A stretch of 64,000 nucleotides of DNA, from positions 124,001-188,000 of IMG/VR virus record IMGVR_UViG_3300044712_001937; one strand, given 5' to 3'. Below the pieces are notes generated by a model. That model saw only the letters and a program-made list of their open reading frames with translations, did not search any database and was not told where the DNA came from. Positions 5,157 to 51,273 of this stretch are shown one piece after another. Each line of letters begins with the position of its first letter. Position 1 is the first letter of the stretch. Made by a program: the position numbers and the translations under genes.

Positions 5157-6623
5157 ATGATATCACCTATTTTAAGTTCGATTAATAAGTTTAATGAAAA
5201 CAATTTTATTCTATTAACTGACAGTTATAAACTAACACATTGGAAACAATATCCCAAAGGTACTACGAAAATTTATTCTTATCTTGAATCCCGTGGTGGT
5301 GAATTTGAGTCAACATTATTTTTTGGATTACAATATTACGTAATTAAATATTTGATTGATGTTCAAATAACTATGGATAATATTGATGAAGCTGAATATT
5401 TAAGTGGAATTCATTTTGGTACTACTGCTAATTTTAATCGTCAGGGTTGGGAACATATTGTTAAAAATCTTAATGGTAAATTACCACTTAAAATTAAGGC
5501 AGTTAAAGAAGGTACTTTAGTTCCAATTTCAAATATATTATTGAGTATTGAAAGTACTGATGAAAAATGTTATTGGTTAACTAATGTGGTTGAAACTTTG
5601 TTACTAAAATTATGGTATCCTATTACAATCGCCAGTAATTCTTTTTATTGTAAGAAAATGATTAAAGAGTGTTTGGAAGAAAGTGGTGGAGTTACTGCTG
5701 GATTACTTTTCAAACTTCATGATTTTGGATATCGTGGTGTTAGTTCCGAAGAAACTGCAGGTATTGGTGGTATGGCTCATTTAGTTAATTTCTTAGGAAC
5801 AGATACTTTAAAAGGCATTGTTTATGCTAACAATTATTATAAATCTGGAGTTTGTGGTTATTCAGTTCCAGCTTCTGAACATTCTGTTGCATGTAGTTTC
5901 GGAAAGGATTTTGAAGATGAATATTTCATGAATATGCTTAAAACATATTCTTCAGGAATAGTTTCAATTGTTTCAGATACTTATGATGTATTTAATTTCG
6001 TAAGTACAATGAGTAATAGGCATAAACAAGCTATTCTTGATAGAGATGGATGTGTTGTATTTCGTCCTGATAGTGGAGATGCTATTGAAGTTTTATCGAA
6101 ATTAATTGATATACTTTGGGATTGTTTCGGTGGTACATATGTTAAAGGATTTAAATTACTTGATTCTCATGTAAGGTTAATTCAAGGTGATGGAATTGAT
6201 AGAAAAACTTTATTGTTAATTATGAAAATGTTAATTAGCAAAGGTTATTCGATTGATAATATTGTATTTGGTTCTGGTGGTGGTCTATTACAAAAATTCG
6301 ATAGAGATACTTGTAAATTTGCAATTAAAGCGAGTTATGGTGAAAGAATTGTTAATGGAAAACTGATAAGTTTTAATATCAGCAAAGACCCTATTACTTC
6401 TAAAGGTAAACGTTCTAAAGCTGGAATGCTTAAACTTATAAAAACAACAGATGATAATTCTTTTAGAACTATTAGTTCTGCAGATATGACAAAAGAAATG
6501 TTTGATAGTTATGAAGATGAACTTGAAGTTGTTTTTGAAAACGGAGAAATTTTGCGTGAACAAACATTTGATGAAATTCGAAAATTATCTGAAAAATATT
6601 TAGAAATATTAATGAAAAATTAA
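5157..6623 (+). CDS. nadV: Nicotinamide phosphoribosyltransferase (NAMPT family)
   Basis: LTDSYKLTHW, LHDFGYRG, PASEHS, SDTYD, RPDSGD, IQGDG, GSGGGLLQK. Confidence 0.95.
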   Translation: MISPILSSINKFNENNFILLTDSYKLTHWKQYPKGTTKIYSYLESRGGEFESTLFFGLQYYVIKYLIDVQITMDNIDEAEYLSGIHFGTTANFNRQGWEHIVKNLNGKLPLKIKAVKEGTLVPISNILLSIESTDEKCYWLTNVVETLLLKLWYPITIASNSFYCKKMIKECLEESGGVTAGLLFKLHDFGYRGVSSEETAGIGGMAHLVNFLGTDTLKGIVYANNYYKSGVCGYSVPASEHSVACSFGKDFEDEYFMNMLKTYSSGIVSIVSDTYDVFNFVSTMSNRHKQAILDRDGCVVFRPDSGDAIEVLSKLIDILWDCFGGTYVKGFKLLDSHVRLIQGDGIDRKTLLLIMKMLISKGYSIDNIVFGSGGGLLQKFDRDTCKFAIKASYGERIVNGKLISFNISKDPITSKGKRSKAGMLKLIKTTDDNSFRTISSADMTKEMFDSYEDELEVVFENGEILREQTFDEIRKLSEKYLEILMKN

Positions 6624-13438: not shown

Positions 13439-13526
13439 GTCGGGTTGCGTGAGTGGTCGAAACGGGGGTTCTGCAAAAGCTCTATTCCGAAAGGTACACA
13501 TTGGTTCAAATCCAATACCCGACTCA
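13439..13526 (+). tRNA. tRNA-Cys(GCA), long variable arm
   Basis: gtcgggt/acccgac acceptor, ct-gca-aa loop, U73. Confidence 0.85.
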
Positions 13527-13530
13527 ATAT

Positions 13531-13620
13531 TCTTGGGTTGCTTTAGTTGGTCGAAAAGTCCAGACTGTTAATCTGGTGAGATTTATCTCCATCATAGGTT
13601 CGAATCCTATCCCAAGAGCA
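13531..13620 (+). tRNA. tRNA-Asn(GTT), long variable arm
   Basis: tcttggg/cccaaga, ccaga-ctgttaa-tctgg, V-arm gagat-tt-atctc. Confidence 0.85.
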
Positions 13621-13687
13621 GTAATTTATTTATTAATATTTAGGTCGTTTGTTCGAATATAAAGTATTTATATTAAATATTTAATAT

Positions 13688-14272
13688 ATGAGTAATTTAA
13701 AAAATAATATCTTAAAATTAAGAGATGAAGGTAAAACATATAGTGAAATAAGTAAATTATTAAATTGTGCAAAAAGTACGATTTCTTATTATTGTAAATT
13801 ATATGGAAAATCAACTATTATTAGCAATAAAATAAATAATAGTGATATTTTATTATTTCAAGAGTTATATGATAATTATCATTCAGTTAATAAAGTTGCA
13901 TTTATTACAAATAGGTCTAAATCTACAATTTTAAAATATGTTAAAACTATAAAAAGAAATAAACAAACGTATGATGAAATAAAAAAAAATAACATTAAAT
14001 ATGTTAATAACTTTAGAAAAAGATTGAAAATAAAATCAGTTGATTATAAGGGCGGAAAATGTATTAAATGTGGTTATAATAAATGTATAGCAGCATTAGA
14101 ATTTCATCATAGAAATCCAAATAATAAAGATTTTGAAATTTCATCATCAAAAATTTTATCTTGGAATAAAATAAAAATTGAATTAGATAAATGTGATTTA
14201 GTTTGTAGTAATTGTCATAAAGAAATTCATTGGGATGTATCCCCTCTGCCTGATAAGCAGTTGGAAGGGTAA
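13688..14272 (+). CDS. HNH endonuclease with N-terminal HTH
   Basis: GGKCIKCGYNKC..ALEFHH...CSNCHKEIH. Confidence 0.85.
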   Translation: MSNLKNNILKLRDEGKTYSEISKLLNCAKSTISYYCKLYGKSTIISNKINNSDILLFQELYDNYHSVNKVAFITNRSKSTILKYVKTIKRNKQTYDEIKKNNIKYVNNFRKRLKIKSVDYKGGKCIKCGYNKCIAALEFHHRNPNNKDFEISSSKILSWNKIKIELDKCDLVCSNCHKEIHWDVSPLPDKQLEG

Positions 14273-14310
14273 TTTGGTTACATAAGGGTTCAATTCCCTT
14301 CTTCCCAACT
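14231..14310 (+). tRNA. Atypical tRNA-Ile(GAT)-like RNA lacking canonical D-arm
   Basis: tgggatg/cttccca acceptor; ctgc-ctgataa-gcag; T-arm aaggg-ttcaatt-ccctt; D-loop-like aatttggtta placed 3' of anticodon arm. Confidence 0.6.
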
Positions 14311-14317
14311 AAAATAT

Positions 14318-14402
14318 AGTGACGTGGATGAATGGTTTAGTCACCAGTCTGATACACTGGATTCTTAGGAATAATATGGGTTCGAATCCCATCGTCACTA
14401 CA
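14318..14402 (+). tRNA. tRNA-Ile(GAT), long variable arm
   Basis: agtgacg/cgtcact; ccagt-ctgatac-actgg; V-arm attc-ttag-gaat. Confidence 0.85.
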
Positions 14403-14457
14403 ATATTTAATAATAAATATTATGATATTAAATAAGTATTTATTATAAAATTTATTT

Positions 14458-14757
14458 ATGAAAAATATTAAATCAAAACAAAGACTATTTGAAGTTATTC
14501 AAAAAATAGATGACACTTATAAATCTAAAGAAATTCTTAATGAAACTAAAGCTTTTGGCAAATTAAGAAAATTAAATAAAAATTTATACGATGATACTAT
14601 TAATTTGGAAGAAAAAATTGGTGAAAATGTATTAAATTTAATTAAAGATTCTATTGAAAAAAATAATTTAAAATATAAAAATGATGAAGAACGTAAATTG
14701 GTATATCTTATAATTTTAGATTTGATTCTTAGTCGTTTTTTAGATAAAACAGAATAA
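14458..14757 (+). CDS. Hypothetical protein
   Basis: ORF after AGTATTTAT motif. Confidence 0.6.
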   Translation: MKNIKSKQRLFEVIQKIDDTYKSKEILNETKAFGKLRKLNKNLYDDTINLEEKIGENVLNLIKDSIEKNNLKYKNDEERKLVYLIILDLILSRFLDKTE

Positions 14758-14762
14758 CAATT

Positions 14763-14855
14763 GGAAAGTTACCCAAGTTGGTGAAGGGGACACACTGCTA
14801 ACGTGTTAGGTCATCTAATAAATGGCGCAAGAGTTCGAGTCTCTTACTTTCCGCA
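14763..14855 (+). tRNA. tRNA-Ser(GCT)
   Basis: Class II cloverleaf, ct-gct-aa, G73. Confidence 0.9.
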
Positions 14856-14919
14856 TTTGGTTTTTGGGTCTACTCCCGTGCTCAAGGATATCAAAAAATA
14901 TTTGTTAACGGGAGTCCTT

Positions 14920-15076
14920 GGAGAATTGGCAGAGTTGTTTAATGCGATGGTCTGGTTCAATATGATTGATTAAGGGTGAACTCCTTAGTCTTTTGCTCAT
15001 GAACGAAAACTATTGTTGCAAAGTAGAGAAGCAAATATTGAAAGCAACCAGAGGTTCGAAACCTTTATTCTCCACA
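14920..15076 (+). tRNA. tRNA-Ser(CGA or GGA)-like with 50-nt anticodon-loop insert
   Basis: ggagaat/attctcc, Ser-type D-arm, atggt-ct[insert]cgaaa-actat, enlarged V-arm. Confidence 0.65.
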
Positions 15077-15081
15077 AAAAT

Positions 15082-15170
15082 GGAAGATTGTCCGAGTGGT
15101 TTATGGAGGCGGTCTTGAAAACCGTTGTGCCCTAAAAAGCACCGTAGGTTCGAATCCTACATCTTCCGCA
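15082..15170 (+). tRNA. tRNA-Ser(TGA)
   Basis: Canonical class II cloverleaf. Confidence 0.93.
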
Positions 15171-15245
15171 ATAGAATCCCTTAAATAAGTAGTTGGTGTT
15201 GCCCCGTTACTGATGAGGATATTTGGGATAGTGTACGGGTTCTTT

Positions 15246-15330
15246 GGAAAGTAGCACTCAATGGTGAGTAACAAGGCTTGAACCCTTGGCTATCCTCCGG
15301 GGTAAGCGTTCGATTCGTTTACTTTCCGCA
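15246..15330 (+). tRNA. tRNA-Ser(TGA), 8/4 (allo-tRNA-like) fold
   Basis: ggaaagta/tactttcc 8-bp acceptor, agcg/cgtt 4-bp T-stem, caagg-cttgaac-ccttg. Confidence 0.75.
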
Positions 15331-15331
15331 C

Positions 15332-15577
15332 TTAAGTTGAATTTGCAGTTCAATTTAATATATGAATAGATAAGAACAATAGTATCTGCAAACTGCTATA
15401 AGTGTGTTTGTTCATATTGAATCCTTGCTTGCTTGGGACGCTGCTTCTAATGTTCAGTTGGGGTATTAAAATGCATCCGTGATTGACAACACGGAAACAA
15501 TAAAAATATCTTCCGAGACATTATCATGTTCGCAATAACATGTGGAATGCGTGAGTATAAGGCTCACACAAGGATTA
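15332..15577 (+). ncRNA. Unknown structured RNA(s) between tRNAs
   Basis: Two hairpins with complementary loops (tttgcag/ctgcaaa); multibranch domain closed by aatccttg/caaggatt. Confidence 0.5.
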
Positions 15578-15582
15578 AATCT

Positions 15583-15656
15583 GGTGACGTAGCTGAGTTG
15601 GTTTAGCGATGCCCTGAAAAGGCATAGAGGTCGGTTCGATTCCGACAGTCACCACA
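15583..15656 (+). tRNA. tRNA-Phe(GAA)
   Basis: atgcc-ctgaaaa-ggcat. Confidence 0.9.
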
Positions 15657-15818
15657 ATTAAAATCTGGTCACATAAGTGTATGTCCTAACCAGAAATACA
15701 TAACCTCATTAGCAGGGAGTATCTTAGTTTGGGCAACTAAGAATGTGAAAATAAAAATAGGTCGGGTTGCAGGTGGCGCAATTTGGCTAACTGTCTCACA
15801 AGGCATCCTATATAATAT

Positions 15819-15893
15819 GGAGATATAGCAAAGATGGTCTATGCAACGGACTGAAAATCCGAGGATACTGGCTCGATACCAGTTATCTCCACA
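15819..15893 (+). tRNA. tRNA-Phe(GAA), second copy
   Basis: cgga-ctgaaaa-tccg. Confidence 0.85.
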
Positions 15894-15902
15894 AAATAAT
15901 TT

Positions 15903-15976
15903 GCGAGTGTAGCACAACGGTTAGTGCGCCAGACTTCCAATCTGGGGATGTGGGTTCGATTCCCTTCACTCGCTCA
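15903..15976 (+). tRNA. tRNA-Gly(TCC)
   Basis: gcgagtg/cactcgc, ct-tcc-aa, U73. Confidence 0.92.
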
Positions 15977-15979
15977 TTT

Positions 15980-16053
15980 GAAGCTATAGTTTAATTGGAT
16001 AGAATGTCCCCAGCAAAGGGGTTGGTATAAGTTCGAGTCTTGTTGGCTTCACA
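15980..16053 (+). tRNA. tRNA-like RNA with aberrant anticodon loop
   Basis: Acceptor, D and T arms intact; cccc-agcaaa-gggg, no U33. Confidence 0.55.
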
Positions 16054-16103
16054 ATAGGTCTGAGGGAGTCCTTTGAAGGTATAAATAACCTGTCCCTCTC
16101 CAC

Positions 16104-16176
16104 GCAATAGTAGCATAGCGGTTAGTGTATCTGCCTACCACGCAGAATTTCGTGAGTTCGAGTCTCACCTATTGCT
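16104..16176 (+). tRNA. tRNA-Gly(ACC)
   Basis: gcaatag/ctattgc, tctgc-ct-acc-ac-gcaga, U73. Confidence 0.8.
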
Positions 16177-16225
16177 CTCGGTCGTTTTTTGTACTTCTCA
16201 GTATTTATATTGAAAAGTACAAATT

Positions 16226-16906
16226 ATGGCAAGAAAAGAAAAACAATACCATTTCATTTATAAAACTACTAATATTTTAACTGGTAAATATTATTATGGA
16301 ATGCATAGTGGCAATAATCTGGAGGATGGTTATTTAGGTTCAGGTAAAAGATTAAGACGTTCTATAAATAAATATGGCAAAGAAAACCATAAACGTGAAA
16401 TTATTGAATTTCTTCCGGATAGAAAATCTTTAATTGAACGTGAGAAAGAAATTGTTAATTTAAATGAAATTGCAAAAGTAGATTGCATGAATTTAGTTGT
16501 TGGTGGAAATGGTGGATTTAATGTAGAAATTGTGAAAAAGGGAAGATTAGCTGTTGATAATATTATGATAACAAGATATGGTATTAATTGGCGTTCTATT
16601 TTAGCTAAAAAAACTTTTAGTGATTTATCAATCAATAAACGTAATGAAATTAATAAAAAAATAATTGAAACCAATAAAAAAAATGGATTTACTTATGATA
16701 ATTTTAAAAATAAAAAGCATACCGAAGAAACAAGGAAAAAATTGAGTAAATCAAGAAAAGGAACAGGAATTGGTAATAAAAATTCACAATTTGATACATG
16801 TTGGATTACTAAAAATGGTATTAATAAAAAAATAAAAAAAGAAAATTTAATTTTATATTTAAAAGATAATTGGATTAAAGGTAGAAAATTAAAATGCATT
16901 CTATAG
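16226..16906 (+). CDS. GIY-YIG (Seg-like) homing endonuclease with NUMOD3
   Basis: FIYKTTN..TGKYYYGMH...YLGSG; KKHTEETRKKLS. Confidence 0.9.
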   Translation: MARKEKQYHFIYKTTNILTGKYYYGMHSGNNLEDGYLGSGKRLRRSINKYGKENHKREIIEFLPDRKSLIEREKEIVNLNEIAKVDCMNLVVGGNGGFNVEIVKKGRLAVDNIMITRYGINWRSILAKKTFSDLSINKRNEINKKIIETNKKNGFTYDNFKNKKHTEETRKKLSKSRKGTGIGNKNSQFDTCWITKNGINKKIKKENLILYLKDNWIKGRKLKCIL

Positions 16907-16970
16907 CTTAACTGGTAAAGCACATCCTTTGTAACGATGGGAAGCGGTTCGAGTCCGATAGAATGCTCTA
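16896..16970 (+). tRNA. Atypical tRNA-Thr(TGT)
   Basis: gcattcta/tagaatgc 8-bp acceptor; tt-tgt-aa loop with closing mismatch; weak T-stem. Confidence 0.55.
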
Positions 16971-17036
16971 AACTAATAGTTGATGCGAGATGGTGAGTGT
17001 ACATAAACACATGTGGTAAGATTATTAGTTTTATTT

Positions 17037-17109
17037 AGTGATGTGGCGCAATGGTTAGCGCAGGACTCTTATAAGGTCGAGGTTGGGGGTTCAAGTCCCT
17101 TCATCACTA
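17037..17109 (+). tRNA. tRNA-Ile(TAT)
   Basis: gact-ct-tat-aa-ggtc; A73. Confidence 0.85.
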
Positions 17110-17181
17110 CTAAATTTTTAAAATGTCTTTTATAATTGAAATAAAGATATTATTTTTGTTTAAATTAAAAATAAATGTATC

Positions 17182-17574
17182 ATGAGTATTCAGGAAAAAA
17201 TTAGGGAAGACATGGTTAATTCCATGAAGAACAAAGACTCTGAAAAGTTGAATTTGTTAAGAGTAGTTATTGGTGAATTTGGAAGAATTGGTAAAGAACT
17301 TTCAGATGAACAATCGGTAAAAGTTATTCAAAAAATGCATGAAAATGCAATTGAAATGAAAAACGATTATGAAATTAGTATACTTGAAGGTTATATTCCT
17401 AAAAAATTAGATGAATCTCAAATAAAAGAAATTGTAAAATCGATTATTGATTCAAATAATATTTCGAGTATTAAAGAAATGGGTAAAGTTATGGGTGAAT
17501 TAAAGAAACATCCTAATGTTGCTCAAATCGATAATAAAATAGCAAGTACTGTTATTAAAGAAATGTTGGCGTAA
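17182..17574 (+). CDS. yqeY: GatB/YqeY domain protein
   Basis: SIQEKIREDM..SMKNKD...YIPKKL...MGKVMG. Confidence 0.85.
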   Translation: MSIQEKIREDMVNSMKNKDSEKLNLLRVVIGEFGRIGKELSDEQSVKVIQKMHENAIEMKNDYEISILEGYIPKKLDESQIKEIVKSIIDSNNISSIKEMGKVMGELKKHPNVAQIDNKIASTVIKEMLA

Positions 17575-17588
17575 AGCCAACATTTTAT

Positions 17589-17663
17589 GCATCGGTAGCT
17601 CAGTGGTAGTAGCGTCTGCCTGTTAAGCAGAGGGTCGTAGGTTCAATCCCTACCCGGTGCGCA
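17589..17663 (+). tRNA. tRNA-Asn(GTT)
   Basis: tctgc-ctgttaa-gcaga; G73. Confidence 0.9.
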
Positions 17664-17700
17664 AATAAAAATTATAAGTATTTATAAGAAAATTTTTAAT

Positions 17701-17967
17701 ATGAGTAAAGTTGGTGATTTTTTAATTAATAGTTGGAATAGTTTTCCAAAAATTTATTTATATATTTTCTTAATAGCTATTATTGCTGGTTTAGCTGGTG
17801 GTATTGAAGTAGGTGGATATACAGTATTTATTTTAGGTGGTGCATTTATTGCATTTATTTGGCTTAGAATGATATGGAATTGGTTAGATAGTTGGTTGAA
17901 TTTAAGTTACAATTTAAAATTATTAGGATATTTGATTAAATCGTGGTTTACTAAAAATGAAAATTAA
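17701..17967 (+). CDS. Hypothetical 2-TM membrane protein
   Basis: Two hydrophobic helices. Confidence 0.6.
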   Translation: MSKVGDFLINSWNSFPKIYLYIFLIAIIAGLAGGIEVGGYTVFILGGAFIAFIWLRMIWNWLDSWLNLSYNLKLLGYLIKSWFTKNEN

Positions 17968-18487
17968 AAAAGTTATACATAAAAACGATAGAAGACCATT
18001 CCCTTATTTTGATTTCTTCATTCCTGTAATTATATTTCGAAATAAATCTTACTCAATTTCAAAATATTTTAAATTTGATTCTTCAACACTATACCATTTT
18101 GAAGATGAAGACCAATACGATATTAATAAATTAATGGGATTTAGTATTGGAATGCATCATAATAATTCGTTTAGATTTGGATGGAGACCTAATAAGGATT
18201 TAAGTAAAATGGAAATCGTAGGTTATGAATATTTAAATAAATTACGTATTCCTGAACTACCTATTTGTGAAGTTAAATTGGATAAATGGTATAAATTTGA
18301 ATTAAAATATATTGCAGAAACTGGTCAAATTGAGTATGTTGTAACAGATGGAAATGAAATTTTTAGTTGTAAACATCCTGCAACCAACATAAAAAGAAAA
18401 TTTAATCTTGGTTATAAATTATATCTTTACTTTGGTGGAAATAAAAAAGCACCTCATGATATGATTATTTATCAGGATAATGAATAA
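17957..18487 (+). CDS. Hypothetical phage protein
   Basis: DINKLMGFS..HHNNSFRFGWR...YFGGNKKAPHD; beta-rich. Confidence 0.7.
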   Translation: MKIKKVIHKNDRRPFPYFDFFIPVIIFRNKSYSISKYFKFDSSTLYHFEDEDQYDINKLMGFSIGMHHNNSFRFGWRPNKDLSKMEIVGYEYLNKLRIPELPICEVKLDKWYKFELKYIAETGQIEYVVTDGNEIFSCKHPATNIKRKFNLGYKLYLYFGGNKKAPHDMIIYQDNE

Positions 18488-18492
18488 TTGAT

Positions 18493-18568
18493 GCCGAAGT
18501 AGCTTTAATTGGTAGAGCACCTGACTTGTAATCAGGGGGTTGGGGGTTCGAGTCCCTTCTTCGGCTCA
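18493..18568 (+). tRNA. tRNA-Thr(TGT)
   Basis: cctga-cttgtaa-tcagg. Confidence 0.92.
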
Positions 18569-18600
18569 TAAAAATAATTTTATCAATAATACCAATATGA

Positions 18601-18834
18601 ATGACGGTGAAGAAAATAAACAGGGAAAAGTTAGCAACTTTATTTCTTTTTTTAGGAACATTTTTCAATCCTATGGGTTACGATGCAATACTAAAATATT
18701 TAATAGACAAGACCGGAAATTATTGGTATTCAATTTCTATTTTTTACCTATTATCAGTATTTTTCTTTATATTATATTTTGTATTTGCTAAAATAAATCC
18801 ATTAAATATTTTTAAATTTAATAAGAATAAATAA
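18601..18834 (+). CDS. Hypothetical membrane protein
   Basis: GTFFNPMGYDA; 2 TM helices. Confidence 0.6.
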   Translation: MTVKKINREKLATLFLFLGTFFNPMGYDAILKYLIDKTGNYWYSISIFYLLSVFFFILYFVFAKINPLNIFKFNKNK

Positions 18835-18872
18835 TAAAATATTAATAATTTGTTTTATATTTGTGATAACAT

Positions 18873-18947
18873 GTCTCCATAGCTCAACGGATAGAGCATT
18901 AGTCTTCTAAACTAAGGATTTGCGTTCGATTCGCAGTGGAGATACTA
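18873..18947 (+). tRNA. tRNA-Arg(TCT)
   Basis: ttagt-cttctaa-actaa. Confidence 0.9.
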
Positions 18948-18960
18948 ACAAAACTAAACT

Positions 18961-19080
18961 ATGACAGTTATTTGTCCCAAATGTAAACAAACAGTTTTTA
19001 TTTTTGAAAATAAAGATTATGTTATTTGTTGTGGAGAAGTAATCTTCGTAGTTAAAACGCTTCCATCGTCCAAGGGATAA
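18961..19080 (+). CDS. Small Zn-ribbon protein (39 aa, below ORF-track cutoff)
   Basis: MTVICPKCKQ...ICCGE. Confidence 0.5.
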   Translation: MTVICPKCKQTVFIFENKDYVICCGEVIFVVKTLPSSKG

Positions 19081-19132
19081 GGCATCGGTTTCCTAAACCG
19101 ATAATACAGGTTCGAGTCCTGTTGGGAGTACA
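19059..19132 (+). tRNA. tRNA-Arg(CCT)
   Basis: tcggt-ttcctaa-accga. Confidence 0.88.
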
Positions 19133-19160
19133 AAACTATTAACAAATAAAACCAAAAATT

Positions 19161-19358
19161 ATGCTTTATTGTAATTATTCTAATGAAATATCACGTGCTC
19201 GTAGGTTGATTAACATTTCAATCGATAGATTGATGTTTATAAAAAACAGATTTAGTGGTAATAACCAAAATCACAAGGATATTTTAGTTAAAACAGATAA
19301 ATTATTAGTTGAATATCAGGAATTGGATAAGGAGGTGAAAAAGCATGAATATCATTAG
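19161..19358 (+). CDS. Hypothetical protein
   Basis: ORF. Confidence 0.5.
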   Translation: MLYCNYSNEISRARRLINISIDRLMFIKNRFSGNNQNHKDILVKTDKLLVEYQELDKEVKKHEYH

Positions 19359-19623
19359 TATTGAGAATACAAAAAGATTTAATAGTTTTTCAAATAAAGT
19401 TGAAATATCTTCAAATTATAAATATAGTGATAATAAAAATTATTTACTTATACTTAATGATGATGATATTAACAATGATAATTGTATTATTAAATTAAGA
19501 GGATATTCTATATCTTGTTTATTGATTCCAAAAAGATATCGTTTTACTTTTTTTGATGAAACACCTATTGGTAAAATAATAAGACGTAATTTAACTGAAG
19601 ATTTTTCAATAAGCTATTACTAA
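19345..19623 (+). CDS. Hypothetical protein
   Basis: ORF. Confidence 0.5.
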   Translation: MNIISIENTKRFNSFSNKVEISSNYKYSDNKNYLLILNDDDINNDNCIIKLRGYSISCLLIPKRYRFTFFDETPIGKIIRRNLTEDFSISYY

Positions 19624-19633
19624 TAGCTTATTT

Positions 19634-19707
19634 GCTCCTGTAGTTCAATGGATAGAATGCTTGGTTTCGACCCAAATGATGCGAGTTCAAGTCTTGTCGG
19701 GAGTACT
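19634..19707 (+). tRNA. tRNA-Arg(TCG)
   Basis: ttgg-tttcgac-ccaa. Confidence 0.85.
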
Positions 19708-19721
19708 AAAAAAAAAGAATT

Positions 19722-19880
19722 ATGGCAACAAAAATAAGAGAAACTCCAATTTTATATGGAAAAGATGCTAAAAGATTTCTTGAAGCAATTGCTAATCCTA
19801 AAAAAATTTCAAAAGAAGAATTGGAGAGAATTAAAAAAAATTACGAAGAAATAAAAGGTATATCTAAAGGTATATTTTAA
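19722..19880 (+). CDS. Small protein resembling antitoxins of GNAT-toxin pairs
   Basis: MATKIRETPILYGKDAKRFLEAIANPKK (52 aa; not in ORF track). Confidence 0.55.
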   Translation: MATKIRETPILYGKDAKRFLEAIANPKKISKEELERIKKNYEEIKGISKGIF

Positions 19881-19883
19881 TAT

Positions 19884-19962
19884 GCATCTGTAGCTCAATT
19901 GGATTAGAGCACCTGTCTACGAAACAGGAGGTTTAAGGGTTCGAATCCCTTCAGATGTACTA
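19884..19962 (+). tRNA. tRNA-Arg(ACG)
   Basis: cctgt-ctacgaa-acagg. Confidence 0.92.
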
Positions 19963-20030
19963 ATTTTAATTAAAATATGAAGAGAACTAATACATCGTAA
20001 ATCAGGTTTCTTACAACTGATTTATGAATT

Positions 20031-20228
20031 ATGGAAAATTCCAATTTAAGTAAGAACCCGACCAAATATTGGTTGGTTGAACTCACGCTTACGAGTGGTG
20101 AAGTTCTCGAATTTTATGTTAAAGCTAAAACACAATTTGATGCTTATGAAAAAGCTGAAGAATATATGTTTTGGCTCGATAACAAAAAATTAAAAAATAA
20201 ATTAAAAGAGTTTAGGCTTATGCCTTAA
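20031..20228 (+). CDS. Hypothetical protein
   Basis: ORF. Confidence 0.55.
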   Translation: MENSNLSKNPTKYWLVELTLTSGEVLEFYVKAKTQFDAYEKAEEYMFWLDNKKLKNKLKEFRLMP

Positions 20229-20269
20229 AAAATGAGTTTTGATGGTATCTCGCCATGAAAAACCATTAC

Positions 20270-20326
20270 ATACGGGATGTAGATATTGGTGAACTGAAAC
20301 ATCTAAGTAATCAACGAGTCCCGTAT
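20270..20326 (+). ncRNA. Hairpin presenting a 23S rRNA helix-11 sequence
   Basis: GAACTGAAACATCTAAGTA (20291-20309) inside atacgggat/gtcccgtat stem. Confidence 0.65.
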
Positions 20327-20330
20327 TAAT

Positions 20331-20404
20331 GTGGGTAACGCATAAATGGTGGTGCACCAGCTTGCCATGCTGGAATAGAGTCGGTTCAATTCCGATTACC
20401 CACT
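20331..20404 (+). tRNA. tRNA-Gly(GCC)
   Basis: ccagc-ttgccat-gctgg; U73. Confidence 0.85.
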
Positions 20405-20462
20405 CTACATTTCGAAAATATTTTTTAGCTTTTTATAGTATTTATATGAAAAATATAATACT

Positions 20463-21179: not shown

Positions 21180-22068
21180 AAATAACACAGAGGATTCATC
21201 GCTGTAGCAATACAGAGGAAGTTCAACACATCTCCGCAAAAAGTGGGAGGCTCAACGTTAATCGGAGTCGTTAATACCACTGAGGATGCAAGCCATACAG
21301 ATTTAGACGGTGTGCGGGTCTATGATAATCGGGTTGGTGCTTAGATAAATGATGAATTTAAGTTCTTTGATTTTTTATTTCATTATTTATTTTTTATAGT
21401 ATTTATATTTATAATTGAATATTATGAAAAATAAAATTTATTATGTGTATCAATTAATTTCTTCAAATGATGAAATTTTTTACATTGGAAAAGGTTCTGG
21501 TAATAGAATGTATCAGCATGTTAGTATTGCTATGGGTAAATCAATTAGTAGAACAAAAAATCTTAAACTATATAATAAAATAAAGAAAATTATTGATAGT
21601 GGTGGATTTATTAAATGTGAAATTATTTTTAAAAGTGAAAATGAAAATGATTGTTTTAATGAAGAAATAAGACTTATAGAAAAAATAGGTCTTATTAATT
21701 TATGTAATTTAACTATTGGTGGTGAAGGTACTTCGGGATATAAATTATCTGAAGAAACTAAATTAAAAATGTCTTTAGCTAAAAAAGATAAAAAAAGAGA
21801 AAATATAAGTAAAATTCATAAAGAAAATTTATTAAAAAATCCTCAAATTTTTAAAATTGGTCATGATGGTTATTGGAATGGTAAAACATTATCTGAAGAA
21901 ACTAAATTAAAAATGTCTTTAGCTAAAAAAGGTCGTAAATTTTCAAAAGAACATAAAGAAAAAATATCGCAATCATTAAAAGGACGAGAACTTTCAGAAA
22001 CACATAAAAATAATATTAAAAAATCAAAGACTTATTAAAACAGAAAGTTGACTACGCTCATGTTATTT
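21180..22068 (+). ncRNA. rnpB: Minimal RNase P RNA interrupted by a homing-endonuclease insert
   Basis: P1 aaataaca/tgttattt; P2 attcatc/gatgaat; P3 ctgta-gcaa-tacag; GAGGAAGUUCAAC pairing with AACAGAAA-GUUGACU (P4 with bulged U); tagataaat before the P2 3' strand. Confidence 0.85.
21424..22038 (+). CDS. GIY-YIG homing endonuclease with NUMOD3 repeats, inside rnpB
   Basis: YYVYQL...FYIGKGSGNR...NLTIGGEG; LSEETKLKMS twice. Confidence 0.88.
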   Translation: MKNKIYYVYQLISSNDEIFYIGKGSGNRMYQHVSIAMGKSISRTKNLKLYNKIKKIIDSGGFIKCEIIFKSENENDCFNEEIRLIEKIGLINLCNLTIGGEGTSGYKLSEETKLKMSLAKKDKKRENISKIHKENLLKNPQIFKIGHDGYWNGKTLSEETKLKMSLAKKGRKFSKEHKEKISQSLKGRELSETHKNNIKKSKTY

Positions 22069-23615: not shown

Positions 23616-23885
23616 GTGAAAGATTTCGAATTATTAAAACGAACATATCCTGTATCAGAATATGACCGATATTGTGATGGGTATGATTTTATTATAAAAA
23701 ATAGTACACCTGAAGAACGACAGGATTGGAAGATTAAGGATAACGAAATCAAACGAATAATTAAAGCTGGTGAAAAATATATTTATCAAGTAGCTAAAGA
23801 AGGAAGAGAATTTAAAACAATGTGTATGTGTTTTGAGAATTATGCTATTATTCGGAAAAAAATATTTAAATTTGAAGATTATTAA
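23616..23885 (+). CDS. Hypothetical protein
   Basis: ORF directly after GCAAC-N16-CGTA promoter. Confidence 0.6.
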   Translation: MKDFELLKRTYPVSEYDRYCDGYDFIIKNSTPEERQDWKIKDNEIKRIIKAGEKYIYQVAKEGREFKTMCMCFENYAIIRKKIFKFEDY

Positions 23886-24035
23886 ATATAAAACATATGA
23901 ATTTATTAGATTTTTTAGATAAACAAAGTGATGGTAGATTAATATTAATTGGAGTAGTATTTGTTTTTGTAGTTGCTATTATTTTTGAAGGTATCGCTGA
24001 AATAATAAGATATCTTAAAAAGTAATATTTTTATT

Positions 24036-24111
24036 GGCTCTATAGCTCAATTGGTCAGAGTGACAGTCTCTAAAACTGGAGGTTATGGGTTCGAACCCCA
24101 TTAGAGCCACA
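24036..24111 (+). tRNA. Amber suppressor tRNA (anticodon CTA)
   Basis: ggctcta/tagagcc; cagt-ct-cta-aa-actg; canonical D and T arms; A73. Confidence 0.9.
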
Positions 24112-24133: not shown

Positions 24134-25036
24134 ATGAAAGAAATTATTCTTGACAATTCATTAACACCTGCAGTTGATTATAAATTCAATAACTTTAATC
24201 CTGAATATGCATTTAATGATTGTAAAGGTTTTAAAGTTGTCACTACTTTAGAATCTGAAATATTTCATCGTAATTATTTAACATATCTTGAATTATGTTG
24301 GAGAAAACATTATGGAATAGTTATTTCACCCACAATTTTATGGAATTTAGTTTTAAATAATTTTGCACATCAAGTTAATAAAACTCCCGAAAAATTCCGA
24401 AAATATTTTACTGAATCTGAAGAAAAACAAGAAATTATTGTACAACAAGGTGGAAATTTAATTGATGTAAATTTAATTATTTCAGAAATTACATCTAAAA
24501 TTCCTTCTAATATTATGGAAAATTTCTTTCCTAAATATACTACAGATACTGAAAAATCAAAAATTGCTAATTACACTGCATTTCTCGACATGGTTAGTCC
24601 ATATTATAACTATGGAATGTTATTATGTGGTATTCCTAAAATTAAAATATTAGGAGAAAAAAGCGATTGGTTAACTATGATGTATAATCTTGGCGCAATT
24701 GTTGCACAAATCCCGGAATTTGAAGAATATGTATTTAAAGTAACATCTATAATTGCTGATATTATCTATGAAAATATTGACTACAGTAAATTTTTTACTT
24801 TAGAAAGATGTGGTTCAGGAAGTCAAGTAATGGTATCTGGTTGGATTATCAATTTTTTTATTGAAATACCCCGTATTGCATATCCTGAAAACTTCATTTC
24901 TTGTGTTTCAAAAATAGATTATAAATGCTATAATGATGGTAATGATTATCGTCTTTATGCAGGATTATTCACTTCAATTATTGAAGATGGTTATCTTATT
25001 CCGGCATTTGATAATGTTTACTACAAAAAAATATAA
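24134..25036 (+). CDS. DUF4419-like protein
   Basis: HYGIVISPT.LW; CGIPKIKILGEKSDW; CGSG...SGWI. Confidence 0.75.
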   Translation: MKEIILDNSLTPAVDYKFNNFNPEYAFNDCKGFKVVTTLESEIFHRNYLTYLELCWRKHYGIVISPTILWNLVLNNFAHQVNKTPEKFRKYFTESEEKQEIIVQQGGNLIDVNLIISEITSKIPSNIMENFFPKYTTDTEKSKIANYTAFLDMVSPYYNYGMLLCGIPKIKILGEKSDWLTMMYNLGAIVAQIPEFEEYVFKVTSIIADIIYENIDYSKFFTLERCGSGSQVMVSGWIINFFIEIPRIAYPENFISCVSKIDYKCYNDGNDYRLYAGLFTSIIEDGYLIPAFDNVYYKKI

Positions 25037-41511: not shown

Positions 41512-44500
41512 ATGTATTTTATGAATATTTTTAATATTATTAAAGAAGAAATTCAAAACGTTGATGAAACATACCAAAGTGTTAGTGAAATAAAACAATT
41601 AGCATCAGATATTTTGATGAAAACTGCTGAAAAAAATGTTGAGAATTTTAATAATAAACATGTTTTTGATTATTTATATGGTATACATTTAAGTGAAATA
41701 GATACTTATAAATATACTGATTTGGTTGATTTTATAAAAAATATAAATATACAAATTTACTATGTACCTAAAGAAAATAACGGTATATATGGAAATTATT
41801 CAGTTTATAATATTAAATCAAAAAAAGAATTTAATCCTAATGCATCAAGAGAAATTAATGCGTTTTATGATTATCAAGATTTGAAAAATGATATTGATAG
41901 TTACATTAAACAAAATAATGGTATTGATGATAAAATACTATATATTAAAATATTTTATAAATTCTACAATACATTAATACATGAGTTACAACATGCTTAT
42001 GATGATTATCGCAGTAAAACTATGGCTTTTAATACTAAACAAAATAAAAGTTATAGAAATAAATATGATACTGCAGTAAATACGAATCAAAATCAAAATG
42101 AATTGCAATATGATTTAGAGAAAAATAAAGCATATCTTAATTTACCACATGAAATTTGGGCAAGATTTACTCAAGCAGTAACAAAAACATATTTCAGTAC
42201 TGTTGATTTTAAAAGTGATAATACAATTACCAATTTAATGTATCCTATTGACAAAGTTGTTGATAATTTTAAAAGAAATTTTCAAGGATATCATCTCCTA
42301 TCTGATAATATGAAAAAAAAATTACTTAATAAAGTAGTCCAATTTTGGCATTATGAACAGGATAAAATAAATAAAAGAAATAGTGATAAAAATAGTAATG
42401 AAATTAATAGTGATAAACCAATTAGTGAAGCTGCTAAAAATATATCTGATACTGAAATTATAATAGATAAAGGAACTGAATTATTTCATGGAACTATTGA
42501 AGAATTTGAAAAGGAAAAAACAACAGTTGGTGGCTATGATAATATATTTTGGACTACATTAGATTCTTCAATTGCTCAAACATATATTCCACAGTCAAGT
42601 AATATATATACTAATAGTAGTCATTATGCAATGCCAAGTGACGACCCTATGGTTGTTAAAACTCAATTAATAATGGGAATTAATTATGATTATTCAAAAG
42701 CTGAATTTAAAAATCATAGAGCAATTTCATATTTTGAAGCACCTATTTTTCAAGAATATTCAGATAATTATGAAAAAGCAAATAATTTAGCGTATCAGAA
42801 ATATCTCGAAATTGAAAATTTTATAAAAGAAGTTAAAATTAAAGAAACTAATGATACTGTAACCGATGAGGATTATGATAAATGGGGAGTATTACAAGAT
42901 GAATATGATTATTTACTTAAACAATCCAGAGAGCTTAATGTCAGTAAATTTAAAAATGATTTTGTTAACCAAAAGTTTATGGAAATGGGTTATAAACCAA
43001 CTGGAACTGAACACGCTCCAGATAATAATTATAGCTGGAAATTAAAATATGATAATGGTCAAGTACAACCTGCAAATTATAAAGCAAAAGGTAGATTGTT
43101 AATAGTAATTCCACAAAGAGATTTAAAAATATTAGACACTACTGATAGAGGTAATCGTGAAGGTGATTTAACTGATTTGGATTATCATAAACATAATTGG
43201 TTTCAAAGTGCTGAACAACATGGCTATGATGGAATTAAAATTAATGATTTTGCACAAAGTTCAGACCAAGGAAATCTTGGACATACTTCTATCGGTTTAT
43301 TTAAAAATACTTTAAAAGATGTTAAAATTGAAGAAATTGACGCAACTCATAATGATTTAGAACCTCATTTTCAAAGTAGTAATTGGCAATCACCTGAATA
43401 TAAAAAATATAAAGGAATTAATGAAATAATTGATGAAGAATTAGAAAAAATTATTCATATTTACGAAAATCCAGATATTGTTAAAAGTGAAGAAAATAAT
43501 ATTAATATTCATTATAATGACCGTAATGCCTATCCTTTTACAACATTTAAAGATTTTGGTAATAGAGTCTTCATAGGAAAAGAAGGTGGTACACATACTA
43601 CAATTGTTTATTATTATAAAGATGAATTACCTTCTGATGTTATGGATAGAATGAGACTTCATATTGAATATGATGGTAGAATTTTTCTTAATGAAAAAAT
43701 AATTTCATTTTGGCATTATCCTGATGAAGATAATTTTAAAGAAATAATTATAAATCTTGAAAAAGCTTTCTTAAATGATAGACATATGAATGTTAATATT
43801 TGGAATGACCCGAATTATAAAATTGAAGTTAAAAATTCAGATTTAAGTTATAATATTATTCCAATTCAACAATATATTAAATCTGAAAATCCAAGTGAAC
43901 TTGATTATAAACAACATATTATGTCTCCATTACTTAAACAAAAAAAATCAGTTCCTCTTGGCTATGGTTCAAAAAACCCTAAAAATACACCTGAATATAG
44001 AAATATGAGAAGAATAGAATTTCAAAGTGATGAAAGTATTAAACATTTAAATAAAATAATTTCTGAAATGGCTAATATATTAAATGAAGGTATCCCTGTA
44101 TTTCACGGTTCAGATAGAAAATTCTCAACTTTCGATATGTCAAAAATTGGAAGTGGTGATGGAAAAAATTTAGGTGGCTGGGGAATTTATTTTTCAGATA
44201 GCGAAGATGTTAGTAGTCGATATGTAACTTCAAATGGTTTCTTAGGTGAATATGAACTACGCAATGGAAACTATTTCGACTTAGACTCAGCATTAGAAGA
44301 TGGTGAACGTATAATTAGAAGACTTCAACAATTAGGAATAGATGAAAATCAAATTGAAGAATTTCAAAATGACTATGTGGAACAAGCTGAAAATTATGGT
44401 AATATTGATAATAAGCAAGCATATGATTGGCTTTCATATGTATTAGGTGGAGAAAAAGAAGCTTCAATGTTCCTTAAATCTATGGGATATATCGGAAATA

Positions 44501-51018: not shown

Positions 51019-51273
51019 ATGAAAACATTTAACCGTACAAGTTTACCGATGACAATTAAATATAATAAAAGGATATACACCCGTAACGATACCGAAAGCA
51101 GTTTATTAATGCAGGGTATTAGTTTAAATTCGTACATTAATTGTATGAAGTTAGCAGGTAGGAAAGTAATTTTGTGTAATGTACTAAGTAGAAACTTAAA
51201 AGGTAAAACAGATTTACATGGGCAACCTTATAAACCTACGCAATGGGTTTTTATACACAAACCTGTTAAATAG
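51019..51273 (+). CDS. Hypothetical protein
   Basis: ORF. Confidence 0.6.
   Translation: MKTFNRTSLPMTIKYNKRIYTRNDTESSLLMQGISLNSYINCMKLAGRKVILCNVLSRNLKGKTDLHGQPYKPTQWVFIHKPVK

What the first reader, a model, noticed from the sequence alone, without database searches (positions are those of the whole stretch)
24036..24111. Amber suppressor tRNA in a phage segment that is not visibly TAG-recoded
Seen: canonical cloverleaf, anticodon CUA, G1-C72, A73, which is not a typical Gln acceptor. TAG stops are rare among ORFs here (e.g. 16906, 19358, 51273) and long genes are not fragmented. Known: code-15 phages recode TAG to Gln. Inference: a targeted or regulatory suppressor, or an early stage of codon capture.
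Basis: partly seen in the sequence, partly recalled or inferred. Interest (0 to 1): 0.65.

Follow-up and report, generated by a model that had tools for sequence, protein, structure and literature searches.

The report
Amber suppressor tRNA, unrecoded jumbo phage
A 365-kb soil phage that uses the ordinary genetic code still keeps a well-formed tRNA that would read the UAG stop codon as an amino acid, as its relatives do; this has been reported before in another giant phage and is still unexplained.

Summary
Window 24036-24110 (+) is a canonical tRNA with anticodon CUA, and it has the best Rfam tRNA score in the window.

The window lies in a complete 364,702-bp, 26% GC jumbo myophage from rhizosphere metagenomes. 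The phage has 49 tRNAs, a tmRNA and a CCA-adding enzyme.

The whole genome uses the standard code:
- Making TAG a sense codon adds about 1% ORF coverage, no more than making TGA sense does.
- No 10-kb block is recoded.
- TAG ends about 5.5% of genes.
- No release factor or aminoacyl-tRNA synthetase gene was found.
- Homology across five genomes shows no conserved gene with an in-frame TAG.

New here: all five relatives that are at least 90% complete carry a CUA tRNA, mapped to the same slot at the end of the tRNA island in the three fully fetched. The bodies have diverged to about 65% identity, but 17 of 21 stem pairs show compensatory changes and TCTAA in the anticodon loop is invariant. So the tRNA is under selection, without recoding.

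One gene, a baseplate hub, keeps TAG in 18 of 19 homologues. An overlapping -1 frame at a slippery T9 run explains that.

The inserted amino acid is unresolved (lysine or glutamine likeliest). Xanthomonas jumbo phage XacN1 is a direct published precedent. This is a new member of a known, unexplained kind.

The parts
24036..24110 (+). tRNA with anticodon CUA (amber suppressor type). G1-C72, A73, 5-nt variable loop, no encoded CCA.
   Evidence: ARAGORN; Rfam RF00005 at 70.1 bits; cloverleaf drawing. In the six-sequence clade alignment, 17 of 21 pairs show compensatory changes.
13439..20405 (+). tRNA island: 20 sense tRNAs interspersed with GIY-YIG homing endonuclease genes. The CUA tRNA sits 3.6 kb beyond its last member, Gly-GCC. 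The order Thr, Arg, Gly, then CUA is shared with relatives.
23616..23885 (+). 89-aa gene upstream of the tRNA. Its homologue is also found just upstream in G005 and G006, which marks the slot as syntenic.
   Evidence: Reciprocal-best-hit synteny table.
23897..24025 (+). 42-aa hydrophobic ORF. Its TAA stop lies 10 nt before the tRNA, on the same strand, so co-transcription is likely (inferred).
24134..25036 (+). DUF4419 gene starting 23 nt after the tRNA. It is part of a G000-specific insertion and is not a conserved partner of the tRNA.
   Evidence: Pfam PF14388, E 2.6e-30; no homologue next to the CUA tRNA of G005, G006 or G008.
16226..16906 (+). TAG-terminated GIY-YIG/NUMOD3 homing endonuclease gene (226 aa). 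The read-through extension is 3 codons. Orthologues in relatives end in TAA.
19161..19358 (+). TAG-terminated 65-aa ORF; extension of 1 codon.
51019..51273 (+). TAG-terminated 84-aa ORF; extension of 2 codons.

Best explanation
This is a genuine, selectively maintained UAG-decoding tRNA in a phage that itself uses the standard code.

**Likely mechanism**
1. It is transcribed with the same-strand genes at the end of the tRNA island (inferred).
2. Its ends are trimmed by host RNase P and 3' nucleases (inferred).
3. CCA is added, because the gene encodes none. The phage encodes its own tRNA nucleotidyltransferase (shown).
4. A host synthetase charges it, because the phage encodes no synthetase of the six families searched (shown). 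By E. coli identity rules lysine or glutamine is likeliest (inferred, unresolved).
5. It then competes with host RF1 at UAG.

**Cost and benefit**
- No conserved phage gene contains an in-frame TAG. Only about 5.5% of phage genes stop at TAG, and their run-on tails are short, so the cost to the phage is small.
- The benefit therefore lies outside the conserved phage ORFs. Candidates are an effect on host or rival-element translation, or rescue of TAG codons that arise in variable accessory genes.
- The clade sits stably in the 'low GC, few TAG stops, suppressor acquired, not yet recoded' state of the Borges model.
For: **The tRNA is real**
-.

**It is under selection**
- All five clade relatives that are at least 90% complete (G005, G006, G007, G008, plus G000) have one CUA tRNA. 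It lies in the syntenic slot in the four genomes where the slot was mapped; G007 was not mapped.
- The bodies are only 61-67% identical, like the other tRNAs of these genomes.
- Even so, 17 of 21 stem pairs show compensatory double changes and TCTAA is invariant.
- The copy in the distant 180-kb phage G001 is 84% identical. It is the best-conserved tRNA between the two genomes.

**The genome uses the standard code**
- ORF coverage is 80.5% under code 11, 81.8% with TAG as sense and 82.6% with TGA as sense.
- A greedy gene set covers 88.9%.
- No 10-kb bin gains more than 0.08 with TAG as sense, and the bins that gain are tRNA-island bins.
- No real-frame TAG aligns to a sense codon across five genomes, except in one 55-aa ORF of G005.
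- 80 clade sheath genes have no in-frame stop.

**No release factor or synthetase gene**
- No RF-1 domain.
- No tRNA-synt_1c, _2, _1b, _2b or _1.

**Maturation**
- A CCA-adding enzyme is encoded at L046:9591-11834, phrog_2244, E 2.4e-67.

**Precedents in standard-code phages**
- XacN1, Summit, and BUCT-ZZ01 and Phosso.
- 25 IMG/VR contigs carry similar tRNAs.
- G001 and G004 are both standard code.
Against: - No expression, processing or charging data exist. All four holder runs are DNA contigs.
- No beneficiary gene or host target was identified.
- The discriminator differs within the clade (A in G000, G007 and G008; G in G005 and G006). The amino acid may therefore differ between members, or some copies may be poorly charged.
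- The G006 copy has a weak D-arm.
- Similarity-based isotype assignment is unreliable here: leave-one-out accuracy was 57%.
- TAG-terminated genes show no enrichment of back-up stops. That argues against strong suppression.
Confidence: 0.6

Rival explanations
1. Partial or incipient code-15 recoding: a few phage genes carry in-frame TAG codons and need the tRNA to be made.
For: - The Borges model places suppressor acquisition before recoding.
- One small ORF in relative G005 (152047-152454) has an in-frame TAG aligned to Leu of its G006 homologue.
- In G000, two TAG sites have coding sequence on both sides.
Against: - Both G000 sites have an ATG at codon +2 after the TAG, and the junction is absent from relatives.
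- Such same-frame neighbours are as frequent after TAA, 54 per 312, as after TAG, 4 per 21.
- No block gains coverage.
- No conserved gene in five genomes has a TAG opposite a sense codon.
- 80 sheath genes are clean.
Confidence: 0.07
2. Targeted programmed read-through: the tRNA exists to extend one or a few specific TAG-terminated proteins, for example the gp26-like baseplate hub protein.
For: - The baseplate-hub gene (genome 43400-44344, minus strand) is the only one of 77 four-member orthogroups with TAG in all members. G001 also has TAG there.
- 13 of 14 further IMG/VR homologues keep TAG.
Against: - Extension length is not conserved: 14, 14, 6, 14, 4, 7 and 3 codons.
- The TAG is the dinucleotide-plus-one of a conserved Leu-Ala (TTA/CTA GCN) in an overlapping -1 frame. 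That frame is open from a T9 slippery run and shows third-position variation in 11 distinct sequences. The one homologue with Leu-Ser (CTG AGC) has TGA instead.
- Other TAG stops are poorly conserved among orthologues, 12 of 73 once this family is excluded.
- Most TAG-terminated genes with an aligned G001 orthologue end in TAA there; the hub gene is the only one that keeps TAG in G001.
Confidence: 0.07
3. Neutral passenger or decaying tRNA: an anticodon mutant of a redundant tRNA copy that persists because TAG is rare. It has no function.
For: - Phage tRNAs here evolve fast and are often duplicated.
- No target was found.
- The G006 copy looks degenerate in the D-arm.
Against: - It holds the syntenic position in the four genomes where the slot was mapped, and a CUA tRNA is present in all five that are at least 90% complete.
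- The anticodon loop is invariant while 17 of 21 stem pairs changed compensatorily.
- The window's copy has the top Rfam score of all the tRNAs there.
- Similar CUA tRNAs recur in unrelated standard-code phages.
Confidence: 0.12
4. The tRNA does not act as a suppressor. It could be a decoy or substrate for a host anticodon nuclease or modification enzyme. Or it decodes something else after modification of C34.
For: - Phage tRNAs are known to counter tRNA-targeting defences (established knowledge, not tested here).
- No back-up stops follow TAG.
Against: - Nothing in the sequence departs from an elongator tRNA.
- Strict conservation of C34-U35-A36 across a diverged clade is what decoding of UAG predicts.
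- A lysidine-type change at C34 would read UAA, which ends 84% of the phage's own genes. That would be very costly.
Confidence: 0.08
5. It is tRNA-Pyl, as ARAGORN labels it.
For: ARAGORN names every CUA tRNA 'Pyl'.
Against: - It has a canonical D-loop with G18G19, a 5-nt variable loop, a 5-bp anticodon stem and a GGTTCGAA T-loop.
- From established knowledge, tRNA-Pyl has a small D-loop without GG, a 3-nt variable loop and a 6-bp anticodon stem.
- No class II synthetase core of families tRNA-synt_2 or _2b is in the genome. PylS, PF01409, was not searched.
Confidence: 0.01

Closest known systems
CUA suppressor tRNAs of Xanthomonas jumbo myophage XacN1 (Yoshikawa et al. 2018, PMC5852040)
   Same: - A jumbo myovirus of about 385 kb with a near-complete tRNA set and a standard-code genome.
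- CUA tRNAs for which in-silico read-through of the 18 amber stops found no target.
- That is the same situation and the same negative result as here.
   Different: - XacN1 carries two copies in each 66-kb terminal repeat and has a GC-rich host. Here there is one copy at the end of an internal tRNA island in a 26% GC genome.
- No sequence relation was found: the phage search gave only BUCT-ZZ01 and Phosso.
- Here, conservation across a whole clade is shown.
Suppressor tRNAs of TAG-recoded (code 15) phages: crAss-like, Lak, Agate and others (Borges et al., bioRxiv 10.1101/2021.08.26.457843)
   Same: - A phage-encoded CUA tRNA in a low-GC genome with few TAG stops.
- No phage synthetase; the tRNA depends on a host enzyme.
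- A likely Bacteroidota-type host (inference).
   Different: - Those phages have in-frame TAG in structural and lysis genes, low code-11 coding density and sometimes RF2.
- None of that is present here.
Other standard-code phages with a predicted suppressor tRNA: Stenotrophomonas phage Summit (PMC9022506), Synechococcus phage BUCT-ZZ01 (ON615601), Sinorhizobium jumbo phage Phosso (PV764938)
   Same: - CUA tRNAs sit among ordinary phage tRNAs.
- For Summit the authors state that no target genes were identified.
- The BUCT-ZZ01 and Phosso tRNAs are 80% identical to the window's over 62-75 nt.
   Different: - The hosts and phage families are unrelated.
- The BUCT-ZZ01 copy is not annotated in its record.
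- The code of these isolates was taken from their deposited annotation. It was not re-tested here.
Laboratory amber suppressors of E. coli and T4: supE (Gln), synthetic tRNA(CUA) series, T4 psu1+ (established knowledge; McClain 1970 is cited in PMC8386662)
   Same: - The same anticodon and the same mode of action, competition with RF1.
- In E. coli, class I tRNA bodies with CUA and A73 tend to be charged by LysRS, and those with U1-A72 and G73 by GlnRS.
   Different: - Those arise by single mutations of sense tRNAs under laboratory selection.
- This one is a natural gene conserved in a phage clade.

Membership tests
tRNA (Rfam RF00005) | Matches the tRNA covariance model above its gathering score, with a full cloverleaf. 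| tested here: met
   70.1 bits against a gathering score of 29, model positions 1-71 of 71; ARAGORN cloverleaf.
Amber suppressor tRNA | Anticodon 5'-CUA-3' at positions 34-36 in a 7-nt loop with U33 and a purine at 37. | tested here: met
   The loop is C32 U33 C34 U35 A36 A37 A38. TCTAA is invariant in six clade copies.
Amber suppressor tRNA | It is aminoacylated and inserts an amino acid at UAG in vivo. | not testable with these tools
   No RNA runs hold the locus. Only DNA contigs were laid.
Code-15 (TAG to Gln) recoded phage system | In-frame TAG codons in conserved genes, and a marked gain in coding density when TAG is read as sense. | tested here: not met
   - Coverage is 80.5% against 81.8%.
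- No bin gains more than 0.08.
- No TAG lies opposite a sense codon in conserved genes of five genomes.
- 80 sheath genes have no in-frame stops.
Code-15 (TAG to Gln) recoded phage system | Accessory factors seen in some members: a phage RF2, or a synthetase for the suppressor. | tested here: not met
   No RF-1 domain. No PF00749, PF00152, PF00579, PF00587 or PF00133. All controls gave positive hits.
tRNA-Gln identity (bacterial GlnRS or GatCAB rules, established knowledge) | Weak U1-A72 pair, G2-C71, G3-C70, G10, U35; discriminator G73 in E. coli. | tested here: not met
   - The tRNA has G1-C72, G2-C71, C3-G70, G10, U35 and A73.
- The phage's own tRNA-Gln have U1-A72 with A73. So 1-72 and 3-70 fail, and 73 is uninformative here.
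- Host rules are unknown, so charging with Gln is not excluded.
tRNA-Lys identity (E. coli LysRS rules, established knowledge) | U35 and A73, in a class I body; C34 and A36 are tolerated in suppressors. | tested here: inconclusive
   - U35, A73, G1-C72 and a 5-nt variable loop are present.
- Its loop differs from the phage's own tRNA-Lys(CUU) only at position 36, and both share a G10.U25 pair.
- But clade copies G005 and G006 have G73.
- The 1-NN isotype classifier is only 57% accurate.
tRNA-Arg identity | A20 and C35. | tested here: not met
   The nearest bodies by similarity are Arg tRNAs. But the tRNA has U20 and U35.
tRNA-Pyl | Compact D-loop without G18G19, a 3-nt variable loop, a 6-bp anticodon stem, and a cognate PylRS. 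| tested here: not met
   It has a canonical 9-nt D-loop with GG, a 5-nt variable loop and a 5-position anticodon stem with a mismatch at 27-43. PylRS itself was not searched.

The most novel reading that the evidence does not exclude
A whole clade of 300-365-kb, 26-31% GC soil jumbo phages has kept an amber suppressor for a long time without recoding any conserved gene. This would be because the tRNA works in trans: it forces read-through of UAG-terminated host (or rival mobile-element) genes. It might act together with the phage's own tmRNA, which would tag the run-on products. That would make it a translational host-takeover or anti-competitor device, not a decoding aid.
Probability: 0.15. 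Interest if true: 0.75.

Novelty: new member of a known kind. Interest (0 to 1): 0.4.

Why it matters
Suppressor tRNAs are usually read as a marker of stop-codon recoding, and annotation pipelines may switch genetic code when they see one. This case shows that a CUA tRNA can be conserved under selection across a clade of giant phages that all use the standard code, with the same slot mapped in four of the genomes.

Two consequences follow:
- The presence of such a tRNA is not evidence of code 15.
- The 'suppressor acquired, not yet recoded' state can be long-lived.

The clade is also a clean natural system for asking what an amber suppressor does for a non-recoded virus. It offers several complete genomes, a conserved locus, and no confounding release factor or synthetase genes.

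Tried and rejected
**Searches that found nothing**
1. Exact and degenerate scans for the same tRNA in IMG/VR found nothing. A looser pattern found 25 contigs.
2. The DUF4419 neighbour has no relatives in IMG/VR. It is not conserved next to the tRNA, so it was rejected as a partner.

**Code tests**
3. TGA recoding was rejected. 19 TGA sites looked 'coding on both sides' by a crude codon score. On inspection they were antisense or low-complexity frames. There is no UCA tRNA.
4. A raw six-frame cross-genome BLAST for TAG opposite sense codons gave 272 hits. All were alternative frames of conserved genes. Filtering to real genes left two, one of them spurious.
5. The apparent code-15 gain in IMG/VR tRNA-array loci came from spurious ORFs running across tRNA genes.

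**Candidate read-through products**
6. The GT 501 aa + 266 aa and 128 aa + 62 aa 'read-through fusions' were rejected. Each has an ATG at +2. Only the first 225 aa of the glycosyltransferase is conserved in relatives, and the extension has no Pfam family.
7. The baseplate-hub TAG as a suppressor target was rejected in favour of the overlapping -1 frame.

**Isotype, relatives and reads**
8. Isotype assignment by nearest neighbour is too inaccurate, at 57%. The Arg-like body is contradicted by U20 and U35.
9. BLAST with the window's tRNA missed the true CUA tRNAs of relatives. They were found only after fetching whole genomes.
10. The 253-aa downstream gene retrieved only unrelated contigs, so it was useless for measuring prevalence.
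11. Laid contigs showed no variants and no RNA.

- Read laying was given 5,001 letters.

Full report
**1. The observation**

ARAGORN finds 22 tRNA genes in the window. One lies at 24036-24110 (+) and has anticodon CUA. Rfam's tRNA model scores it 70.1 bits (E 3e-13), the best tRNA match in the window.

The sequence gives the following:
- G1-C72, G2-C71, C3-G70 and A73.
- A D-arm GCUC/GAGU with a G10.U25 wobble, and a D-loop with G18G19 and U20.
- Anticodon loop C-U-CUA-A-A, on a stem with four Watson-Crick pairs and an A27.G43 mismatch.
- A 5-nt variable loop and a standard GGUUCGAAC T-arm.
- No encoded CCA.

**2. What the window belongs to**

The window is bases 124001-188000 of a single 364,702-bp IMG/VR virus record. 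The record has direct terminal repeats and is rated 100% complete. It is 26.3% GC, and its last 127 bases repeat its start.

It encodes:
- 49 tRNAs and a tmRNA (tmRNA at Rfam 81.9 bits).
- A tail sheath, a baseplate wedge protein, a large terminase, a DnaB-like helicase, a DNA polymerase and a tRNA nucleotidyltransferase.

It is a jumbo myovirus, distant from all isolates: the best tail-sheath identity is about 31%. The same DNA occurs in contigs of four rhizosphere metagenome runs. No RNA run holds it, and the laid contigs show no variants.

Genes lack Shine-Dalgarno motifs: GGAG occurs upstream of 5 of 252 genes. The Bacteroidota promoter motif TAnnTTTG is enriched upstream of starts, and so is its bipartite form. 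The counts are 80 against 50.6 +/- 8.2, and 11 against 1.1 +/- 0.8. TTGACA and TATAAT are depleted. A Bacteroidota-type host is an inference from this.

**3. Is the genome recoded?**

No. The evidence:
- ORFs of at least 100 aa cover 80.5% of the genome under code 11. They cover 81.8% if TAG is sense and 82.6% if TGA is sense.
- A greedy non-overlapping gene set covers 88.9%. Its stops are TAA 412, TGA 53 and TAG 27, so TAG is 5.5%.
- In 10-kb bins, the gain from reading TAG as sense never exceeds 0.08. The two bins that reach 0.07-0.08 are tRNA-island bins, where spurious ORFs run across tRNA genes and the TGA-sense gain is similar.
- Read-through extensions after TAG (median 9.5 codons) are like those after TAA (6) and TGA (7).
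- Only four TAG sites have coding-like sequence for at least 50 codons on both sides. That is the same proportion as for TAA: 4 of 21 against 54 of 312. Three of the four have a start codon at +1 or +2.
- The two substantial cases are adjacent genes. One is a glycosyltransferase of 501 aa followed by 266 aa. The other is a 128-aa protein followed by 62 aa. Their junctions are not conserved in relatives.
- An apparent excess of TGA sites was made of antisense frames.
- The genome has no RF-1 domain protein.
- It has no synthetase core of families tRNA-synt_1c, _2, _1b, _2b or _1. All controls were positive.

**4. Relatives**

The tail sheath retrieves 80 IMG/VR loci at 55-70% identity.

I fetched three complete relatives whole: G005 (321.6 kb), G006 (327.2 kb) and G008 (327.7 kb). 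All three use the standard code, with TAG at 5-8% of stops. Each carries 39-54 tRNAs, and G005 and G006 also carry a tmRNA. Each has exactly one CUA tRNA at the same end of the tRNA island, after Gly-GCC and Ser-GCU. Flanking orthologues confirm the slot.

G007 (91% complete) has one too. Three fragments of 32-75% completeness gave no hit to a loop pattern, which says little. None of the 80 sheath genes contains an in-frame stop.

The CUA tRNAs of relatives are only 61-67% identical to the window's. That is typical of tRNAs in these genomes, whose median is 65-71%. Yet in the six-sequence alignment the consensus is a cloverleaf. In it, 17 of 21 pairs have changed on both sides and stayed paired, and TCTAA in the anticodon loop is invariant. 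That is the signature of selection on a working tRNA that reads UAG.

The discriminator is A in G000, G007 and G008, and G in G005 and G006.

**5. The same kind of tRNA elsewhere**

- The phage collection holds two similar CUA tRNAs. One is in Synechococcus phage BUCT-ZZ01, next to a tmRNA, and one is in Sinorhizobium jumbo phage Phosso.
- A loose pattern finds 25 IMG/VR contigs with CUA tRNAs inside tRNA arrays. Their flanks show no real in-frame TAG.
- Two of these records were fetched whole. G001 (180.5 kb, 26% GC) and G004 (218 kb, 42% GC, TAG at 16% of stops) both use the standard code.
- The G001 copy is 84% identical to the window's and has compensatory acceptor-stem changes. It is the best-conserved tRNA between the two phages; the others have a median of 63%. 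This suggests horizontal exchange or unusually strong constraint.

**6. Is there a target gene?**

I compared stop codons across reciprocal-best-hit orthologues. Of 77 orthogroups present in all four clade genomes, one has TAG in all four, and also in G001. It is the 314-aa gene at genome 43400-44344 (-), a T4_baseplate / baseplate-hub (gp26-like) protein. Thirteen of 14 further IMG/VR homologues also end in TAG.

This looked like a target, but it is not:
- Four codons before the TAG lies a conserved run, GAT TTT TTT TTC CC.
- The -1 frame is open from that run for about 70 codons in all 11 distinct sequences.
- The -1 peptide (FFFP..LAGEYKKMV.EEI.ILTKHAKFQ...) is conserved upstream of its own ATG, and the variation sits at -1-frame third positions.
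- The zero-frame TAG is simply the overlap of Leu-Ala (TTA/CTA GCN) in that frame. The one homologue with Leu-Ser (CTG AGC) has TGA instead.
- Zero-frame extensions vary from 3 to 14 codons.

So the conserved TAG is explained by dual coding at a probable -1 frameshift or slippage site just upstream of the 844-aa tape-measure-like gene. This follows the classic tail-chaperone arrangement (established knowledge). Other TAG stops are poorly conserved: 12 of 73 orthologue comparisons.

A filtered cross-genome search found a single believable TAG opposite a sense codon. It is in a 55-aa ORF of G005, opposite a Leu in G006.

**7. Which amino acid?**

This is unresolved.
- The nearest bodies in the phage are Arg(ACG) and Lys(CUU). 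But U20 and U35 rule out the ArgRS determinants, and nearest-neighbour isotyping is only 57% accurate.
- The anticodon loop differs from the phage's tRNA-Lys(CUU) only at position 36.
- A73 with G1-C72 matches the clade's Lys tRNAs. It does not match its Gln tRNAs, which all begin with U1 or A1.
- By E. coli rules (established knowledge), class I CUA tRNAs with A73 tend to take Lys, and U35 also attracts GlnRS. TAG-recoded phages of Bacteroidota read TAG as Gln.
- My estimate is Lys about 0.3, Gln about 0.3 and other about 0.4.

**8. Interpretation**

*Shown:*
- It is a real CUA tRNA, and it is conserved by selection.
- The genome and the clade use the standard code.
- The phage has no release factor and no synthetase of the families searched.
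- It has its own CCA-adding enzyme.
- No conserved in-frame TAG and no conserved read-through extension exists.

*Inferred:*
- It is co-transcribed with same-strand neighbours: there are 10 nt after the upstream stop and 23 nt before the next ATG.
- It is charged by a host enzyme and competes with RF1.
- Its cost is low because TAG stops are few and the tails are short.
- Its benefit lies outside the conserved phage ORFs.

This matches the published, unexplained case of jumbo phage XacN1, where in-silico read-through of 18 amber stops found nothing. It also matches phage Summit. And it fits the pre-recoding state in the model of Borges et al., with the added point that the state is stable across a clade.

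**9. Verdict**

It is not new in kind. The added value is the clade-wide conservation under selection without recoding, with synteny mapped in four genomes, and the elimination of the only apparent target.

I give it an interest score of 0.4 and class it as a new member of a known kind.

Noticed in passing
L033:4380-4440 (genome 43,380-43,440, minus strand), outside the window: There is a conserved slippery run GATTTTTTTTTCCC four codons before the stop of the gp26-like baseplate-hub gene. The -1 frame stays open for about 70 codons and is conserved in 11 distinct clade sequences. It lies just upstream of an 844-aa tape-measure-like gene. This is probably a programmed -1 frameshift or transcriptional slippage of the tail-chaperone type.
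   Followed up: partly
window 13439-13525, 13531-13619, 14318-14401; genome 104574-104658, 106791-106875, 107847-107932, 109731-109814, 120697-120784: Many tRNAs come in pairs. One is of normal length. The other is 84-89 nt, with an extra stem-loop (often a GAAA or UUCG loop) in the variable region. This holds for Cys, Asn, Ile, Gln, Glu, Val, Trp and Lys, amino acids whose bacterial tRNAs normally have short variable loops. Long forms also occur in G005, G006 and G008.
   Followed up: partly
window 16104-16177; genome 219501-219596; relatives G005, G006, G008: Some tRNAs have A at position 34 that are unusual for bacteria. These are Gly(ACC) in the window, a 96-nt His(AUG) that alone ends in an encoded CCA, and Leu(AAG), Ser(ACU) and Cys(ACA) in relatives.
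   Followed up: no
genome 111992-112353 (L037:6992-7353): The phage encodes a tmRNA (Rfam 81.9 bits) with a long tag ending in LAIAA. It is conserved in G005 and G006. Cyanophage BUCT-ZZ01 also has a tmRNA 1 kb from its CUA tRNA, so suppressor and tmRNA co-occur.
   Followed up: partly
whole genome, upstream regions of genes: There are no Shine-Dalgarno motifs. TAnnTTTG and TTTG-N17-21-TAnnTTTG are enriched 20-40 nt upstream of starts, while TTGACA and TATAAT are depleted. This suggests a Bacteroidota-type host.
   Followed up: partly
window 14231-14308 (+): Rfam reports an extra weak tRNA match here (30.8 bits, just above the gathering score) that ARAGORN does not call. It sits directly before tRNA-Ile(GAU).
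   Followed up: no
window 16226-16906 and 21415-22038 (+): GIY-YIG/NUMOD3 homing endonuclease genes are interspersed among the tRNA genes. An HNH homing endonuclease of 665 aa lies next to the tail sheath gene, at genome 59243-61240.
   Followed up: no
window 5133-6623 (+) and 41512-44574 (+): There is a nicotinamide phosphoribosyltransferase gene (NAD salvage, as reported for gut jumbo phages). There is also a 1020-aa protein with a C-terminal ART-PolyVal ADP-ribosyltransferase domain.
   Followed up: no
L035:1729-4227 (genome 74729-77227, +): The large terminase ORF (832 aa) matches terminase families only in its first 300 residues or so. Residues 372-824 match a DNA helicase family. It may be a fusion or an inserted element.
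   Followed up: no
G005 152047-152454 (L165): A small ORF in the tRNA island of relative G005 has an in-frame TAG at codon 21, aligned to Leu of its G006 homologue. It is the only believable in-frame TAG found in five genomes.
   Followed up: partly
window 46000-64000 (genome 170-190 kb): ORFs of at least 80 aa cover only 58-68% here under any code. The region appears to be packed with very short genes.
   Followed up: no
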